From the IMG/VR virus record IMGVR_UViG_3300028676_000005, positions 165,430-229,429 of that record: a DNA stretch of 64,000 nucleotides. One strand, 5' to 3'. Below are positions 43,868 to 53,248 of the stretch, in pieces. A model generated the notes under the pieces. The model was not told the origin of the DNA. It did not search any database and saw nothing but the letters and a program-made list of their open reading frames with translations. Each line of letters begins with the position of its first letter. Positions within the stretch are counted from its first letter, which is position 1. Position numbers and translations under genes: made by a program.

Positions 43868-45155
43868 GTTAGAGTATCTTAAACATTGGCTAGAGGTAAA
43901 GGGGTACGCTGCCAAGGCGGCACTCCAATCCTTTATTTCTATCCAATTAGAAGATGAAGACAGTTCAGGTGCCTTTAAGAAGATTGAGCATGCCGTCTTT
44001 ATTGAAGGCGGTAAGTTCCACGCGTTTGTTGATGGCAAACAGGTAACTATTGAAGGCGATGTAAACCTTCCCTTTTATCACAACGATGACTTCATTAAAG
44101 TACCTGCTGATTTCCACCCAGTATTGCAGGGCAAGAACTACGTCACTACCTTTGGTCTGTTGATCTTCAACATTATTCTTTTCTGGGAAGTGTTCGGTAA
44201 AAAGGTTGACTATGTAAACGAAGAGTTTACGTCCAGCTTTATCAAGAAGACCATTGAGCGGCTCATGGTGGATAACCCTAAAGAAGGGGAAACCGTTCCG
44301 GAAGACAAAGCTTCTGTAGATGACTGCCTCAAGTTTACTCGTCACTGTAATTACCTGGAAGGTCTTGGTACTTACTTTGTTAAGCCTGGTGGTATTGACG
44401 CGTTGACCGCTAGTCCTAAAGTTCTTAAGCGTAAAGCAGAACTCTTTGCACAACTTAAGAAAGACGGTAAGCTCAATGATCCAGTTGCGTTTACTAAGGT
44501 TATTAAAGAGCTGGTAGATCTTGACCGTGAAGAAATGCTTAATGGCCCAAGTGCCAACTTCTTCATCAATGATAAGTTCATCTCTAACGCCCGCAAACGT
44601 ATGTTCATTGCGTTTGGTATTGAGCCGAAGGGCGATGGGTGGGTTGGTCTGTCGATGTCCCTGGACGAAGGCATGGACCCTAACGAGATCGTTGCCTACA
44701 TTAACACGGCAGTGGCTGGTAGTTACTCTCGCTCGATGTCTACTGGTGAAGGTGGTGCTCAAGTAAAAGGCATCCTTAAACTTGTTGGTCGTCGTAAAGT
44801 AGGTAGCCCTGACTGTGGTACTAAACTTGGCGAGGCTCGCTATATCCACGAAACCTTTGGTCGTCGTTGGATTGGTAGTTTCTATTGCAAAGGTACCGAA
44901 GGGGTTCTCATCACTAAGGATAATCTGCCAGAACTTATTGGCAAGACTCTGTTGATCCGCTCCCCAGCGTTCTGTGCTGAGAGTGAAGGTAACTTCTGTG
45001 TTAAGTGTTGTGGTGAAGGCTTGGGCAAACTTGCTAACCGTCTGAGTGCCGAGGTTGTTCGTATTCCTACAACAGCCATGCTTACTCGAATGAAAGCAGC
45101 TCACATTGCTGGTGCAAGTACCGTTGTAATGGATCTTGCTATTGCAATCAAATAA
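43860..45155 (+). CDS. Virion RNA polymerase beta-prime middle subunit (phiKZ gp80-like)
   Basis: Bridge-helix-like GSYSRSMSTGEGG, DCGT, Zn site RSPAFC..FCVKCCG. Confidence 0.88.
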   Translation: MTKLEYLKHWLEVKGYAAKAALQSFISIQLEDEDSSGAFKKIEHAVFIEGGKFHAFVDGKQVTIEGDVNLPFYHNDDFIKVPADFHPVLQGKNYVTTFGLLIFNIILFWEVFGKKVDYVNEEFTSSFIKKTIERLMVDNPKEGETVPEDKASVDDCLKFTRHCNYLEGLGTYFVKPGGIDALTASPKVLKRKAELFAQLKKDGKLNDPVAFTKVIKELVDLDREEMLNGPSANFFINDKFISNARKRMFIAFGIEPKGDGWVGLSMSLDEGMDPNEIVAYINTAVAGSYSRSMSTGEGGAQVKGILKLVGRRKVGSPDCGTKLGEARYIHETFGRRWIGSFYCKGTEGVLITKDNLPELIGKTLLIRSPAFCAESEGNFCVKCCGEGLGKLANRLSAEVVRIPTTAMLTRMKAAHIAGASTVVMDLAIAIK

Positions 45156-45176
45156 AAGCAAAAAAATAAACATGAC

Positions 45177-46653: not shown

Positions 46654-48963
46654 CTACTGCATCGCGAGGTCAGATTGAAGTACTCTAAACGATTTCTGTT
46701 TAGCTGCAAACGCTACCCGTCGTTTGTCCATACACTCGCCATGTTTGGGAATGTCCACACAGACTGGGAAGATAAAGCGCGCATCACAACGACCGCCAAA
46801 TTTACCTAACAGGTTACGAACACGACCAGCCATCTGTTTGTTCCGTTGTGTGGAGAAAACAGTGTGGAAGGAAATGGCTGTGATCAATCCTGGGATGTCT
46901 TTACCGGTACCGCAGCTACCTGGGGTGGTTATCAGATTTTCGTGCTCCATGTACTTCTTAGGAGTCTTTTTATCCAATGTTCCCAGGAACGTGTCGAAGT
47001 CTTCACCCGGGTAACGCTCCCGGAACTTCTCTTTCATAAGCAGCGCCATTTCAATCAGAGTAAAGAAGAAGATACATTTAGTACCAGGCTCCTTTTGATC
47101 CAAATAAAACATACGATACATTTCGTCGGCTAACTCAAAGTAGAAGTTAGTCAACGCCTCGCTCTTAAGTATAGACTTCTCCAGTGCGATATCATTGTAA
47201 CTACCGAACTGTTGAGATTGAATCTTGTACTTACGAACATCCATCTGATAAAGATAAGCGACAAAGTCAATGTAGTTCTCAGGTTCTGGTTCTTTAAGCC
47301 GGATTGCGATTGGTGCCATCCTGAGGTACATCTTGTTCATGAATGGATCGTCACCTTTTAAGGTAGCCGACAGCATGAACGTTTTAGCTACGTTACCATA
47401 AAGCATAGACAAGCATACTTCATGGAACGACTCATGACTCTCGTCGATCACACGCAGCCCAGGGGCTATCTTAGCGATGACAGTGTCAAGGCATGGTAAG
47501 TTACCATCCTTTCGCTGCGCCCGCATGTACGTGCTTATACGAGTAATAGGAAGGATAATTAACTTAGGCTCGATCCGCCCATCATTAATAATGTCTCCCA
47601 ATCTTGGTAAATCAGTAAACTCCCAAATCAATACGTCTTTTGCAGCAACCTCAAACATTTCTGCTAGGTCTTTCTGCCAGATAGGGATGTAACGTGGCTG
47701 AATAGTAATCAATGTTCGCTTGCCAAGTTTCATCATGGCAAACAACGACATATACGTGTTGTGTGTCACAATGAAATCGTCGGTAATGTAAAGCCGACTT
47801 GGGTGAGCAATAGAAATGCAACGAACTGGCTCAGATATTTTAAGATCCTCGATTGACATGATTGCCAACTCGGGAACTTCTAGTCTGACTAACTCACCAG
47901 CACGCTTCTTGTAAATTGGATCACTAAACAGATCTTCTGGTCGTGAGTACCAGACGGTCATCCAATGACCCGTGTCACCGTCTTCATGACCGTGATACAG
48001 CGCTTTACCGCCTAAACTGCGAACAAGGTATTGTACTTCTTCTAATTCTTCCTTATCGTCACTACGGAACCCTAGGTAGCGATCGTCAATAACCATGAAG
48101 CCATTAGTCATCAATGAACGCAATTTGTTTAAACGCTGCTTGTTACTTCCGTACCGATGATCGAAACCTTCTTCAATATTCGGCACACGTTCTGATTTGC
48201 ACAGTGGTATTGTTACACCAGACAGGCGCCCTTTAGTGTCTTGTAGCTCCAGCAACATCCTGGTACTAAAGACCTTACGGAAATCACCAGGCTCAGCCCC
48301 AGGGGCTTCTTTGCCATGATGATCAAACACATCCCACATATGGTCGAGTCCCACATCAACAGACCGGCCATCTTCAAACTTTACACGATACAACTGTTCC
48401 GTGTCTTGTGGGTACACACCGGTAACGTAAGTGACCGATCCATCCCAGGCGATTACTTTATCGCCTTTAACCAATTCGCCCATGGTAGTCCAGCCACCAG
48501 GGATTTTTACTTTGGCATACAACGGCTGAGATTTACCACCACCAGTAGGAGCCGCGTTAACTTTCAACGCACCTGGCTTTAACTGATAGTCAATCCATTC
48601 ATGTTGGTGCTCTCGAGGAGTCTTAAACTGCTCTTTGATGGCAAACTCTACGTCTACCCCAACAATCTCTGGTTCTTTCTTTAAAACGATCCTGGCTTCG
48701 TTATAACCACGATACTTGGCCAGGTTGATCAGATCCTTGAGGATCGAAAGCGGCATGCGGTATTCAGTGCGATCGTTATTAGTGCGGGCAAAGACGTGCG
48801 TCGGTACCCAGCGCTTTTTACGACTGTTAGGGATTGCCTCTTGACCGAACTTGGTTAATTCAGTTCGACAATAGGGTCTTAATACTTGTGCTTCAAACTC
48901 ACCGTAGAAATCCTTTACGATGATGTAGTTGTTTGCAACACTTATAGTTGCGACAGAACGCAT
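46654..48963 (-). CDS. SF2 (UvsW-like) helicase with intein (phiKZ gp75-like)
   Basis: Walker A APTGGGK/T split by intein, DESH, SAT, GTGKDIPGL, QMAGR. Confidence 0.9.
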   Translation of the reverse strand: MRSVATISVANNYIIVKDFYGEFEAQVLRPYCRTELTKFGQEAIPNSRKKRWVPTHVFARTNNDRTEYRMPLSILKDLINLAKYRGYNEARIVLKKEPEIVGVDVEFAIKEQFKTPREHQHEWIDYQLKPGALKVNAAPTGGGKSQPLYAKVKIPGGWTTMGELVKGDKVIAWDGSVTYVTGVYPQDTEQLYRVKFEDGRSVDVGLDHMWDVFDHHGKEAPGAEPGDFRKVFSTRMLLELQDTKGRLSGVTIPLCKSERVPNIEEGFDHRYGSNKQRLNKLRSLMTNGFMVIDDRYLGFRSDDKEELEEVQYLVRSLGGKALYHGHEDGDTGHWMTVWYSRPEDLFSDPIYKKRAGELVRLEVPELAIMSIEDLKISEPVRCISIAHPSRLYITDDFIVTHNTYMSLFAMMKLGKRTLITIQPRYIPIWQKDLAEMFEVAAKDVLIWEFTDLPRLGDIINDGRIEPKLIILPITRISTYMRAQRKDGNLPCLDTVIAKIAPGLRVIDESHESFHEVCLSMLYGNVAKTFMLSATLKGDDPFMNKMYLRMAPIAIRLKEPEPENYIDFVAYLYQMDVRKYKIQSQQFGSYNDIALEKSILKSEALTNFYFELADEMYRMFYLDQKEPGTKCIFFFTLIEMALLMKEKFRERYPGEDFDTFLGTLDKKTPKKYMEHENLITTPGSCGTGKDIPGLITAISFHTVFSTQRNKQMAGRVRNLLGKFGGRCDARFIFPVCVDIPKHGECMDKRRVAFAAKQKSFRVLQSDLAMQ
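47758..48531 (-). mobile_element. Intein (258 aa) with degenerate LAGLIDADG-type endonuclease remnant
   Basis: Block A SQPLYAKV, block B DHMW, block F VRCISI, block G FIVTHN|T; inserted in the P-loop. Confidence 0.92.
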
Positions 48964-49017: not shown

Positions 49018-51027
49018 TTACGTTACCCCGTGCTGGAAGAAGGTTTCCAATGGACTGGACTGACGATCTTTTACCAGGAAGGTTTTAACGTTGCTGAGAA
49101 CAGTCTGTTGACCCTCAGCAATGAGCATGGTACCAGCACCTCGGTTCTTCACACACGTCATAAAGTTCTCAAAGTACTTTGGACCAGTACCCCAAGTTAG
49201 CTTATACGACAGATTGGCTGGATCTTTACACAGCAATGCAGCCAGCATGATTTCCGGGTGTATGATGTTAATGCCCTTAGTTTCCTGGGCGATGAGTGTC
49301 CAGAACTCGGCCAGCACTTCACCAAAGATCTTGGGAGTTACTGGTTGCGATTTCCAGGCGCTGTTACGCTTGTTGAACGTCAAGAAGTTTTCTACACGAC
49401 TGCGGTGAGCATCCAAGCCTTCCCGTGTAAGTGGGAGTACAAAGATTGGAGCTTTAGCCGACCAGCCATCCAGATTGACTGCAATGTGTTTCTTATCGAG
49501 AACTTCCCAGCCTTTGTCCATAAGGAACCGCAGGAACTCCAACGAGAACCGTGAGGTACGTGAGGATACAGAAGTTTGAGCCGAATGTTGTTGGATAGTT
49601 TTACCACCCACCATTACGTCTTCGATCTCATACTGGAACGTAACGTCAGCAAAGTAAGGAAGTTTATCAATCCCTACTTCGTCGAGTACGTCTAGCGAAC
49701 GCAAGTCAGCTAGGTCGCGGACCATACTTGACTTGAGAATTAACTTAGTATCTTTTACGCACATCTCTGGCTTGAGGAAGATTTTGTCTCCATCAGAGGT
49801 CAGGATCTCACGGTCCTTGTTAGCTACCACGAACCGGCGACTTACAGCATTTCGGATAAAGTGCTTAGTAGAAAGCATCTTCTGACCAAGCGGGTTACAA
49901 ATGGTTGTCGCAGCAAACATCCCGAGGTTTGCGTCTCGAGCCATGATGACGTTGTACGGGATAGAACCTTTCATGGCTCCCACACACTTACCACACGGCA
50001 TGCCATCCACACCAGCCGTACAGAAAGCAATACTGCGGAAACGAATGGTCTCCCCAGTTTTAATCTCAAGTACGTTTGTATGGTCAATCATTCTTTCGCT
50101 ACCGTCATCCATCAGACGGTATTTGCCTACGCAGGCTAGTGCCAGCTCAGCGCTAGGAATGTACATCTCAACCAGCTGGTTGCTACCACAGTCGACATCA
50201 TGAAGAATGCCTTTGACCACAGCAGTTGCTAAGTGAGTTTTACGGTGAAACCATTCGGAGTCTTTCAGCCCACGGCCGTTAGAGATCAAGCTCATACCGG
50301 ATGATTTACCATCACCCAACACGTCTACTTGGTCCACGATGCCTTCGGCGTAGTTACTCATGATTGCGTTTGGTAGGATCGCGTTACTCAGGTCAAATAC
50401 GTTAGCACGTAAAACTGCCAACTGATATGCCTGGTTAACACTCACGCCGCCTGTGCGCGTCATCAGTGCAACGGTATTATTGATCAGACTTTCGTCATTA
50501 CGAATATGGTCGCTAAACATGTTTTCGCCATCATCGATGGAGATCTCACGATTGCGTACCTTTCTTTGTATTTCGATAATGCCTGGGTTCAGCATTAACT
50601 CATCCACGCATTCAGCGCGAGCAGAGATAATGGAACGTTCGGTCATTACCGTGATCATGTTGTTAAGCTTGGCTTGCCAAGCGTGGATCAGTCGCTTGTT
50701 GTGATCGTTCTCAACTGGGTTAGGTAAGTCTCCCTTAATACCGAGGATGTAATCCAACGGAATCTTGAGAGTTCTGTCATTGTAAACAATGTTCCGGTGT
50801 TTCTCTTCACGAGGAGACGGGACCAATTCGTCAATGCTGTACGGGACGTCGTTATACTTACGGTGAATCAACAGGCCTTGCCAGGTTAGCATCAACGCAT
50901 ATGAATCAGACTTGGCTTTGCGGCCAGCGTCATCAACAACGTCAACCGCCTTTCGGATGTTTCGCCAACGGAGAATATCCTTTTCCGTTAAATTGGCGAA
51001 GTACCGAAGATTTACTTCCATTGTCAT
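49018..51027 (-). CDS. Non-virion RNA polymerase beta-prime C-terminal subunit (phiKZ gp74-like)
   Basis: LKDSEWFHRK bridge helix, DCGS, RSIAFC..CGKCVG Zn site, trigger-loop-like QKMLSTKH. Confidence 0.9.
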   Translation of the reverse strand: MTMEVNLRYFANLTEKDILRWRNIRKAVDVVDDAGRKAKSDSYALMLTWQGLLIHRKYNDVPYSIDELVPSPREEKHRNIVYNDRTLKIPLDYILGIKGDLPNPVENDHNKRLIHAWQAKLNNMITVMTERSIISARAECVDELMLNPGIIEIQRKVRNREISIDDGENMFSDHIRNDESLINNTVALMTRTGGVSVNQAYQLAVLRANVFDLSNAILPNAIMSNYAEGIVDQVDVLGDGKSSGMSLISNGRGLKDSEWFHRKTHLATAVVKGILHDVDCGSNQLVEMYIPSAELALACVGKYRLMDDGSERMIDHTNVLEIKTGETIRFRSIAFCTAGVDGMPCGKCVGAMKGSIPYNVIMARDANLGMFAATTICNPLGQKMLSTKHFIRNAVSRRFVVANKDREILTSDGDKIFLKPEMCVKDTKLILKSSMVRDLADLRSLDVLDEVGIDKLPYFADVTFQYEIEDVMVGGKTIQQHSAQTSVSSRTSRFSLEFLRFLMDKGWEVLDKKHIAVNLDGWSAKAPIFVLPLTREGLDAHRSRVENFLTFNKRNSAWKSQPVTPKIFGEVLAEFWTLIAQETKGINIIHPEIMLAALLCKDPANLSYKLTWGTGPKYFENFMTCVKNRGAGTMLIAEGQQTVLSNVKTFLVKDRQSSPLETFFQHGVT

Positions 51028-51037
51028 GTCACGGCCC

Positions 51038-53248
51038 TTATTGTGGGGATTGACTATCTTCTTTCAGGATAGCGTTAAGGGTTTCGTCTTGAAGCATTTC
51101 TGCCATCACATGTTCAGGCACAAAGTTATCGGCTGATCGATCTTCAGGAAGCTCTGCACGAATTGTCCAACCAGAGTCAGACAACATGTCCATGGACATT
51201 TGCACGGCTCGGTTATAGATGTACTCGTCAGGCTTAACCAACAGGTCAATGTTAAACGAATCGTTTGCACGAATGATGCGACGAGTTACCCTGGTACGCA
51301 ACTCCGGGGAGTTAGCCAATGCCAAGTTCTTATTGATTTCCTGAGCACCGGCCTGGCTAGCAGTCAGACGAGCCTCAGTTTCACCTTTGTTACGGTTAGG
51401 CTTGTTTTGCAGGAAGTCTGCATATTTGTACATGTCGTTTGGTTTAGCGGGCATACCAAACATGTTGGAGAGTGGCATTGCTTGCGCACTCATATCTGTA
51501 CCGAACTTATCCAACAACATGAAGTGCTGGTTAGTCATGAGTACAGGGTTGTCGCTTTCTACGTTTTCCCCAAGACTATCGTAGAAGGTAATCTTTTCTG
51601 GTTTATAGGAGTAGACCTGGCGCAGTGCACGAATGATGGCAACACCATACAGCTTGGTGTTACTAACAACTTGGACACTGATTTGTGTCTTAGCGGTGTA
51701 ATCAATGTACTCTGCAATTACAGCATCACCTACCACTGTCCGTTTAACCAGCTCAGCAAACTCTGGGAAACCGGTCTCGAAGAACTTCATCAGTGTGGCG
51801 AAAGCTTCGGCGTACTTACCTTGCTTACGCAGGGCAACTACTTCTTTATGAACGCGAACGTTAATAAAGTTAATACTTTGTTCCAACAACATCGAGAAGA
51901 TCTGCCGACGGAATGCCGGGATGTTGTTAATAACGATATCTGCATAGGTGCCGTCTGGTGCACGAGGTGCCATCCATTGCGGGATGATTCTTACGATTAC
52001 ACCTTTGTCGCCGTTCATACCAGTCATCTTGAACTTAGCACGAGCGACCACGTTTTCACGCAGGATTATGTTTACGGTCCAGTCTTTCAACTTGGAACGC
52101 TTGATGCCACGGAACAGTGTGTTGATTTTACCCAGTGGGCTACGGGTATAACTGGCGGACGCCATACGCAGGAAAGTATCCAGCTGGTTAGACACTGGAA
52201 TGTCCAGGTCATTGTTAGCAGCCAGCTTTTGGTTATACCAGCGGATTACGCTGTTCCACATGTCGTTCTGACGACGTTCGTAACGATCCAGTTGTTTGGT
52301 ATGGGTTTGCTCAATGTGGTCCGTAGAGCGGTTATTAGAGCGGTCCTTCATACGCTCGCTGATTACTTCCACCGACATTACCTCTGCATCCACTGGGGTG
52401 CGGAACAGAATGTCATGGTTGATGTCAGGAGTACGCAGTGCTTTCTTGGTCAGTGTGGTGAGAGCCGTTTTGCTGTTACGCTTACGGAAACCCATTACAA
52501 TGCCGTCTGCACGAATACGTTCGCCAGATTCTGGCAACGCCTTTGGATCATCGTCAGTACCATACAGCATCAAAGGAACTACTTCATCTTCGTTCCAGCT
52601 GTGGCTGCGCAAGTGTTTAAACATGCACATCAGCTTTTGAGATGCCGCTACGTCGGTAATGGCGATACCGTCCTCTTCGGTGTAGTGGAATGAACCGGCG
52701 CAGGTTACCAGGTCAGTACCAAATAGCCATTCTTTGGTATCACTGATACGAGGACTTTGACCAAAGATAGTGCCTTTAGGGAATCGGGCACCTTTCTCAA
52801 TACGACCCATTACTTTCTGGTCGTACACATATTCAAAACCGATATAAGTATTCTGTGTATTGTATTTAGGTAGTTCCAAAACGTCATAAGCATTGAGCTC
52901 GTCGTTCTTAAATACCAGCCACATGGCACCCCATTTGTCAATGATGTCCCCAGAAGGGCTTGGGGAGTTTACAAAGAAGACTTCTTCAACCACCATGTTA
53001 CTAGGTGCTTCAATGCGACGCGCACCTTTTGCATATTGGTATTCTGCACCAGTGATGATCTTGCGTTTAGAACGACCATTGGTGTCTACGGATTTAGGGA
53101 TCATGTTACCAACCATGTACATACGGGTTGGTGATGAAATCCATGGGAAGCATACAAGGTTAATACCGACGCCTTGCAGCTCTGGGTCCATTTGGTTGGG
53201 ACGTTTTAAATATTCGAATTGTTCCGGTAAATTGTCAAAATCAAGCAT
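51038..53248 (-). CDS. Non-virion RNA polymerase beta C-terminal subunit (phiKZ gp71-73-like), uninterrupted
   Basis: SSPTRMYM, EEDGIAI, KMTGMNGDKGVI, ADIVIN, GETEAR motifs. Confidence 0.92.
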   Translation of the reverse strand: MLDFDNLPEQFEYLKRPNQMDPELQGVGINLVCFPWISSPTRMYMVGNMIPKSVDTNGRSKRKIITGAEYQYAKGARRIEAPSNMVVEEVFFVNSPSPSGDIIDKWGAMWLVFKNDELNAYDVLELPKYNTQNTYIGFEYVYDQKVMGRIEKGARFPKGTIFGQSPRISDTKEWLFGTDLVTCAGSFHYTEEDGIAITDVAASQKLMCMFKHLRSHSWNEDEVVPLMLYGTDDDPKALPESGERIRADGIVMGFRKRNSKTALTTLTKKALRTPDINHDILFRTPVDAEVMSVEVISERMKDRSNNRSTDHIEQTHTKQLDRYERRQNDMWNSVIRWYNQKLAANNDLDIPVSNQLDTFLRMASASYTRSPLGKINTLFRGIKRSKLKDWTVNIILRENVVARAKFKMTGMNGDKGVIVRIIPQWMAPRAPDGTYADIVINNIPAFRRQIFSMLLEQSINFINVRVHKEVVALRKQGKYAEAFATLMKFFETGFPEFAELVKRTVVGDAVIAEYIDYTAKTQISVQVVSNTKLYGVAIIRALRQVYSYKPEKITFYDSLGENVESDNPVLMTNQHFMLLDKFGTDMSAQAMPLSNMFGMPAKPNDMYKYADFLQNKPNRNKGETEARLTASQAGAQEINKNLALANSPELRTRVTRRIIRANDSFNIDLLVKPDEYIYNRAVQMSMDMLSDSGWTIRAELPEDRSADNFVPEHVMAEMLQDETLNAILKEDSQSPQ

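What the first reader, a model, noticed from the sequence alone, without database searches (positions are those of the whole stretch)
47758..48531. Helicase intein combining Ser1 with the class-3 WCT signature and a collapsed endonuclease
Seen: a 258-aa intein splits Walker A (GGGK|T). It begins with Ser (SQPL) yet has Trp in block B (DHMW), Cys at F4 (VRCISI) and Thr in block G (VTHN). Known: this W-C-T triad defines class 3 inteins, which typically lack a position-1 nucleophile and are phage-associated. The middle retains only remnants of LAGLIDADG blocks (RLNKLRSLMTNG; EEVQYLVRSLGG), with no clear first motif. Inference: a possible dual-mechanism or transitional intein on its way to becoming a mini-intein. 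It could also gate helicase activity through splicing.
Basis: partly seen in the sequence, partly recalled or inferred. Interest (0 to 1): 0.6.

Follow-up and report, generated by a model that had tools for sequence, protein, structure and literature searches.

The report
Ordinary class 3 intein, decayed endonuclease
A jumbo-phage helicase gene carries a self-splicing protein insert (a class 3 intein) whose homing nuclease has half rotted away; its first-residue serine is most likely a harmless variant, so the element is an ordinary member of a well-known family.

Summary
A 258-aa intein (window 47758-48531, minus strand) sits between GGGK and T of the Walker A motif of a 769-aa SF2 helicase in a 229-kb relative of Pseudomonas phage EL. 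An intein-less ortholog fixes both boundaries exactly.

W66, C238 and T256 lie at B12, F4 and G5 when aligned to the solved class 3 Msm DnaB-1 intein.

The "dual-mechanism or transitional class" reading is not supported:
- In 109 inteins at this same site, H-B10, W-B12, C-F4, T-G5, H-G6 and N-G7 are invariant.
- Position 1 is free: A59, L14, G8, S6, D6, E6, F5, M4, C1.
- Ser1 arose at least four times, and the sister clade of this intein has Gly1.
- WCT inteins with Ser1 or Cys1 were already listed in the paper that defined class 3, and a P1S mutant of the prototype still splices.

The "collapsed endonuclease" reading is right. Full-length site-mates (343-387 aa) carry both LAGLIDADG motifs. 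Here the first motif and about 100 residues are deleted, and the second reads LMTNG instead of LLDTDG. The remnant evolves about twice as fast as the splicing domain.

Verdict: a new member of a known kind, of low interest.

The parts
46654..48963 (-). Helicase precursor gene: 769 aa, a divergent SF2 helicase and ortholog of Pseudomonas phage EL gp040
   Evidence: ORF list. PHROG 16 'DNA helicase', E 2e-37. tblastn to EL gp040 at 46% identity with the same flanking split RNA-polymerase genes.
48532..48963 (-). N-extein, residues 1-144, ending in the Walker A sequence GGGK
   Evidence: The junction is identical to that of the intein-less ortholog P0010.
47758..48531 (-). Class 3 intein, 258 aa
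48529..48531 (-). Position 1, Ser, codon TCT (one base from the Ala codon GCT)
   Evidence: Position 1 is hypervariable among the 109 site-mates.
48334..48345 (-). Block B core DHMW: His64 is B10 and Trp66 is B12
   Evidence: H and W are invariant in 109 of 109 inteins.
48157..48306 (-). Residues 76-125, an insert between block B and the endonuclease remnant. The whole model superposes on PI-SceI, so this is possibly its DNA-recognition region.
   Evidence: Secondary structure of the model. About 250 of 258 residues align to PI-SceI at Z about 19. The role is inferred.
47887..48156 (-). Remnant of the LAGLIDADG homing endonuclease, residues 126-215: a single alpha-beta-beta-alpha-beta-beta-alpha half-domain
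   Evidence: No Pfam LAGLIDADG hit here, whereas full-length site-mates hit PF14528 and PF05204. The remnant shows 27% identity against 50-58% for the splicing parts.
48100..48138 (-). Degenerate second LAGLIDADG motif, QRLNKLRSLMTNG. The family consensus is QRLxLLQGLLDTDG, and the acidic residue before Gly is Asn here.
48007..48042 (-). EEVQYLVRSLGG, a conserved endonuclease block that follows the second motif
47818..47820 (-). Cys238, block F position 4, the predicted initiating nucleophile
   Evidence: Aligns to Cys118 of Msm DnaB-1. Invariant in 109 of 109 inteins.
47758..47769 (-). Block G VTHN: Thr256 is G5, His257 is G6 and Asn258 is G7
46654..47757 (-). C-extein of 367 aa plus stop. 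It begins with Thr+1 (47755-47757), the Thr of Walker A GK-T.
   Evidence: Sub-threshold Helicase_C match.

Best explanation
This is an ordinary class 3 intein inserted at the classic P-loop site (GK|T) of a jumbo-phage SF2 helicase.

Likely mechanism (inferred from homology):
1. Cys238 (F4), helped by His64 (B10) and Thr256 (G5) and packed by Trp66 (B12), attacks the Lys-1/Ser1 peptide bond and forms a block F branched thioester.
2. The N-extein is passed to Thr+1.
3. Asn258 cyclises and releases the intein.
4. An O-N shift restores the GGGKT Walker A motif.

Ser1 is a selectively near-neutral occupant of a position that class 3 chemistry does not use.

The intein descends from a full-length LAGLIDADG homing intein. 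A deletion removed the first LAGLIDADG motif and about 100 residues, and the catalytic acid of the second motif is lost. The element can therefore no longer home, and it is inherited vertically while it decays.
For: - Boundaries and empty-site allele.
- WCT at B12, F4 and G5 by alignment to 6bs8.
- The closest solved relatives by sequence are the class 3 DnaB1 inteins.
- Structure: Z 19.4, rmsd 1.5 A, 30% identity to 6bs8.
- 109 inteins at the same site: catalytic residues invariant, +1 is Thr (107) or Ser (2), position 1 takes nine residue types.
- Tree: this intein and its 96%-identical twin are sister, with 97% support, to four Gly1 inteins that share the deletion. Ser1 needs at least 4 origins. 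Ala/Ser flips occur within very tight clades, for example P0110 and P0114.
- Block B position 7 is Gly here, not Thr.
- P1A, P1S and P1C mutants of the prototype MP-Be intein all still splice. Three of 37 WCT inteins known in 2009 already had Ser1 or Cys1 (PMC2807308).
- Endonuclease decay.
Against: Nothing here is biochemical. Splicing, the Cys238 branch point and the loss of nuclease activity are all inferred. Ser1 could in principle perform an N-O acyl shift, and comparative data cannot exclude a minor parallel route. The remnant folds with high predicted confidence, so some retained role (for example folding support or DNA binding) is not excluded.
Confidence: 0.88

Rival explanations
1. 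Dual-mechanism or transitional intein: Ser1 starts a class 1 N-O acyl shift alongside, or instead of, the Cys238 attack. The element would then be an intermediate between class 1 and class 3.
For: Ser1 is chemically able to do this. F4 Cys also occurs in some class 1 inteins (PMC4031507).
Against: - Position 1 is unconstrained in the family, with nine residue types.
- Ser1 is derived inside clades with Gly1 or Ala1 neighbours and arose at least 4 times. It is a tip state, not an ancestral intermediate.
- No Thr at B7.
- The full class 3 signature and +1 Thr are retained.
- MP-Be P1S splices no better than wild type.
Confidence: 0.06
2. Regulatory intein: splicing is conditional (for example redox or metal control of Cys238) and gates helicase activity during infection.
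For: The Walker A motif is interrupted, so the precursor must be inactive. The related class 3 Msm DnaB-1 intein is reported to respond to oxidative stress and zinc (abstracts of PMC6195587 and PMC7360933).
Against: Nearest relatives with 73-80% extein identity lack the intein altogether. Presence is sporadic, as expected of a selfish element. No sequence feature specific to regulation was found.
Confidence: 0.05
3. Dead intein or pseudogene: the element no longer splices and the helicase is non-functional.
For: The endonuclease has decayed. An inactive class 3 intein is known (Arsp-FB24, PMC3196547).
Against: Every splicing residue is intact. The frame is open. The splicing parts are conserved at 50-58% identity in the clade. 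The genome is rated complete, and the helicase is conserved across this phage group.
Confidence: 0.03

Closest known systems
Class 3 inteins (prototype: mycobacteriophage Bethlehem DnaB intein; solved: Msm DnaB-1 6bs8, Mch DnaB-1 6rix)
   Same: WCT triplet at B12, F4 and G5; His at B10; His-Asn C-terminus; Thr+1. Insertion is in an ATPase P-loop of a phage helicase. The HINT fold superposes at rmsd 1.5 A with 30% identity.
   Different: It begins with Ser rather than a non-nucleophile. This is a minority state already recorded for the class. It also carries a half-endonuclease remnant, whereas the solved DnaB-1 inteins are mini-inteins.
Intein of Pseudomonas phage EL gp040 helicase and its counterparts in other large phages (records of PhiPA3, SL2, 2050HW, Aeromonas and Vibrio phages)
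   Same: Orthologous host gene, identical insertion site and a homologous intein (42% identity). The EL intein is also reduced, at 248 aa.
   Different: Position 1 is Met in an EL-type protein (P0023, 760 aa, the same length as EL gp040). The extent of the endonuclease deletion differs and looks independent.
PI-SceI (VMA1 intein): HINT domain plus DNA-recognition region plus LAGLIDADG endonuclease
   Same: About 250 of the 258 residues superpose at Z about 19. The overall domain arrangement is the same.
   Different: PI-SceI is class 1 with two LAGLIDADG halves and an active nuclease. Here only one half remains, and its acidic residue is replaced.

Membership tests
Intein (HINT splicing domain) | In-frame insert that is absent from orthologs, with a precise junction | tested here: met
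   P0010 reads AAPTGGGK|TYMSLFAM, and 53 of 60 nt match around the site.
Intein (HINT splicing domain) | HINT fold with blocks A, B, F and G; His at B10; C-terminal His-Asn; nucleophilic +1 residue | tested here: met
   pLDDT 96. Z 17-19 to many solved inteins. H64, H257, N258 and T+1 are present.
Intein (HINT splicing domain) | Protein splicing actually occurs | not testable with these tools
   Requires expression and product analysis.
Class 3 intein | Trp at B12, Cys at F4, Thr at G5 | tested here: met
   W66, C238 and T256 align to Trp67, Cys118 and Thr137 of Msm DnaB-1. All three are invariant in 109 site-mates.
Class 3 intein | Ser or Thr (rarely Cys) at +1 | tested here: met
   Thr+1.
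Class 3 intein | No Cys, Ser or Thr at position 1 (original 2009 criterion, described as usual rather than universal) | tested here: not met
   Ser1. The defining paper itself lists 3 of 37 WCT inteins with Ser1 or Cys1. Later texts say an N-terminal nucleophile 'is not required'. In this family 7 of 109 inteins have Ser or Cys at position 1.
Class 3 intein | Falls inside the class 3 lineage | tested here: met
   The nearest solved sequences are class 3 DnaB1 inteins. It nests with 97% support beside Gly1 inteins within a family that mostly has Ala1. No tree including class 1 outgroups was built.
Class 3 intein | Block F branched thioester intermediate, with Cys F4 obligatory | not testable with these tools
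   Needs C238A and S1A mutants and detection of the intermediate.
LAGLIDADG homing endonuclease (active) | Two LAGLIDADG helices, each ending in a catalytic acidic residue | tested here: not met
   The first motif is deleted. The second reads LMTNG against the consensus LLDTDG. No Pfam hit.

The most novel reading that the evidence does not exclude
Ser1 in this lineage opens a minor class 1-type route (an N-O acyl shift) in parallel with the Cys238 attack. That would make it a natural intein able to splice by two mechanisms. Alternatively, the retained and confidently folded half-LAGLIDADG domain has taken on a new, non-nuclease role.
Probability: 0.07. Interest if true: 0.5.

Novelty: new member of a known kind. 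Interest (0 to 1): 0.15.

Why it matters
It matters little for intein mechanism. The Ser1-plus-WCT combination is a known minority state, and the comparative data argue that it is neutral.

Three modest points of value remain:
- The 109 site-mates form a clean natural series at one insertion site. It runs from the empty site through full-length homing inteins to several independently truncated forms, which illustrates the homing cycle.
- The series gives a natural mutational scan of position 1 in class 3 inteins.
- Curated intein models (Pfam Hint, TIGR01445) score this intein below threshold, so annotation pipelines are likely to miss it and mislabel the gene. Orthologs in public phage records carry names such as 'terminase large subunit' and 'DarB-like antirestriction'.

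Tried and rejected
- Pfam and NCBIfam scans of the intein gave only sub-threshold Hint and intein_Nterm hits. They did not help with classification.
- The two papers most directly on point (Tori & Perler 2011, PMC3133030; Brace et al. 2010, PMC2923505) are not held. The supplement of PMC2807308 that names the three Ser1/Cys1 WCT inteins is not held either. My recollection that such inteins were later shown to splice by the class 3 route is from memory only and is not used as evidence.
- Literature searches for jumbo-phage helicase inteins returned nothing specific.
- The careful maximum-likelihood search did not finish, so the tree is the quick one with SH-aLRT support only.
The exteins were scanned separately by reference, and the natural intein-less ortholog P0010 stood in for the spliced product. 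only counted identities over extein alignment columns and over 30+30 nt flanks inside a script.
- The large representative-protein search, read mapping and complex prediction were not used, because the question did not need them.
- A pseudogene reading and a chance-ORF reading were considered and rejected (open frame, intact catalytic residues, structural match).

Full report
**What is there.** The finding lies on the minus strand. ORF 46654..48963 encodes a 769-aa protein. They lie between ...AAPTGGGK and TYMSLFAM.... The host protein is a divergent SF2 helicase:
- PHROG 16 'DNA helicase', E 2e-37.
- Sub-threshold DEAD, ResIII and Helicase_C matches on the natural intein-less ortholog and on the C-extein.

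**The genome.** The window is part of a 229,429-bp virus record rated complete. Its nearest named relatives are Pseudomonas phage EL and allied jumbo phages. The EL gp040 helicase is 46% identical and is flanked by the same split RNA-polymerase subunit genes.

**Boundaries.** A word search with the whole precursor returned helicases in three size groups:
- about 511 aa, with no insert;
- about 745-770 aa;
- about 855-895 aa.

The closest extein relative apart from a 98% twin is P0010 (510 aa, 79.6% extein identity). It reads AAPTGGGK|TYMSLFAM with nothing in between. Its contig has the same gene order, and 53 of 60 nt around the junction are identical to the window. The insert is therefore precisely delimited and is polymorphic among close relatives.

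**Is it a class 3 intein?** By sequence, the best solved matches are the class 3 DnaB-1 inteins of Mycobacterium chimaera and M. smegmatis, at E 1e-9 to 2e-8. That alignment places H64, W66, C238 and N258 on His65, Trp67, Cys118 and Asn139 of Msm DnaB-1. The literature numbers these B10, B12, F4 and G7 (PMC5222942). T256 is G5.

An AlphaFold model built on 93 aligned sequences has mean pLDDT 96. Its HINT part superposes on 6bs8 at Z 19.4, rmsd 1.5 A over 123 residues with 30% identity.

The insertion point, between the invariant Lys and the Thr of the P-loop, is described as the 'classic' intein site (PMC5050341). The paper that defined class 3 notes that these inteins sit mostly in ATPase P-loops of helicase-like phage proteins (PMC2807308).

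**Does Ser1 mean anything?** I extracted the 109 inteins found at this same site. H-B10, W-B12, C-F4, T-G5, H-G6 and N-G7 are invariant in all 109. The +1 residue is Thr in 107 and Ser in 2. Position 1 is free:

| Residue at position 1 | A | L | G | S | D | E | F | M | C |
|---|---|---|---|---|---|---|---|---|---|
| Count | 59 | 14 | 8 | 6 | 6 | 6 | 5 | 4 | 1 |

This pattern is expected if position 1 plays no chemical role. Further points:
- On a quick maximum-likelihood tree, the window intein and its twin are sister, with SH-aLRT 97, to four Gly1 inteins of 244-246 aa. Ser1 needs at least four origins. Ala/Ser alternation occurs within very tight clades.
- The Ser codon is TCT, one base from the Ala codon GCT.
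- Block B position 7, usually Thr in class 1 inteins, is Gly here.
- Two further class 3 inteins in the same genome also sit after a P-loop GK and begin with Ala and apparently Phe.
- The defining paper counted three of 37 WCT inteins with Ser1 or Cys1, and showed that P1A, P1S and P1C mutants of the prototype still splice (PMC2807308).

The 'dual-mechanism or transitional' idea therefore has no comparative support. Ser1 is a derived tip state, not an intermediate. Only mutagenesis can exclude a minor parallel route.

**The middle of the intein.** Full-length site-mates (343-387 aa) hit Pfam LAGLIDADG_3 and Hom_end and show both motifs...PYVMGVILGDG... and ...QRLELLQGLLDTDG.... Relative to them, the window intein shows three changes:
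- It lacks the first motif and roughly the next 100 residues.
- It keeps the second motif as QRLNKLRSLMTNG, with Asn where the catalytic acid should be.
- It keeps the following EEVQYLVRSLGG block.

The model shows one alpha-beta-beta-alpha-beta-beta-alpha unit at about residues 130-212. About 250 of the 258 residues superpose on PI-SceI at Z about 19.

Within the five-member clade that shares this deletion, the remnant is 27% identical. The two splicing segments are 50-58% identical. This points to relaxed constraint on the remnant. Other lineages at the same site carry deletions of different extent.

**Mechanism (inferred).** Cys238 attacks the Lys-1/Ser1 amide and forms the block F branched thioester. 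The N-extein then moves to Thr+1, Asn258 cyclises, and an O-N shift rebuilds GGGKT. Until that happens the helicase cannot bind ATP. That is true of every P-loop intein and is not evidence of regulation. Relatives that lack the intein argue that it is dispensable.

**Limits.**
- There is no biochemistry here.
- The tree is a quick search without class 1 outgroups.
- The two most relevant papers were not available.
They were scanned separately by reference, and P0010 served as the natural spliced-form proxy.

**Verdict.** The class 3 signature and the endonuclease decay are confirmed. The special significance of Ser1 is not supported. This is a new member of a known kind, of low interest.

Noticed in passing
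G000:C1:76914-77129 (locus L003), outside the window: A second helicase (PHROG 62) in the same genome carries another class 3 intein at its P-loop: ...AVGSGK|AHPLDTRV...HLW...VCITV...VTHN|TFTS. It begins with Ala.
   Followed up: partly
G000:C1:22355-23245 (loci L004 and L005), outside the window: The large terminase (PHROG 2; 1103-aa ORF) carries a third class 3 intein after ...PRQQGK, apparently starting with Phe and ending VTHN|T. The N-terminal junction was not verified against an intein-less ortholog.
   Followed up: partly
window 49018-51027 (minus) compared with phage EL gp039 (L001:2278-5388): The RNA-polymerase subunit gene next to the helicase is 669 aa here and matches its PHROG profile end to end. 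The EL ortholog is 1036 aa and contains a stretch similar to this intein. EL therefore has an intein that this phage lacks at that locus.
   Followed up: partly
window 43965-45173 (minus) and 51200-52693 (plus): Long open frames of 402 and 497 aa run antisense to the RNA-polymerase subunit genes. They are probably non-coding shadows of the sense frames and were not examined.
   Followed up: no
public phage records matched: Orthologs of this helicase are annotated inconsistently: 'terminase large subunit', 'DarB-like antirestriction', 'SNF2 domain helicase', 'DOD-type homing endonuclease', or split into two genes. The unrecognised intein is the probable cause.
   Followed up: no
window 48199-48201 (Cys111 of the intein, in IPLCKSE): This is the only other cysteine in the intein. 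In the printed subset, site-mates show Cys, Leu, Pro, Thr, Asn, Ile, Val or Ala at this spot (PLCKSE, PLLKP, PLPKSE, PLTESE). The column count was made one residue off, on Lys112, so Cys111 conservation across all 109 was not measured. Any redox pairing with Cys238 was not assessed.
   Followed up: no
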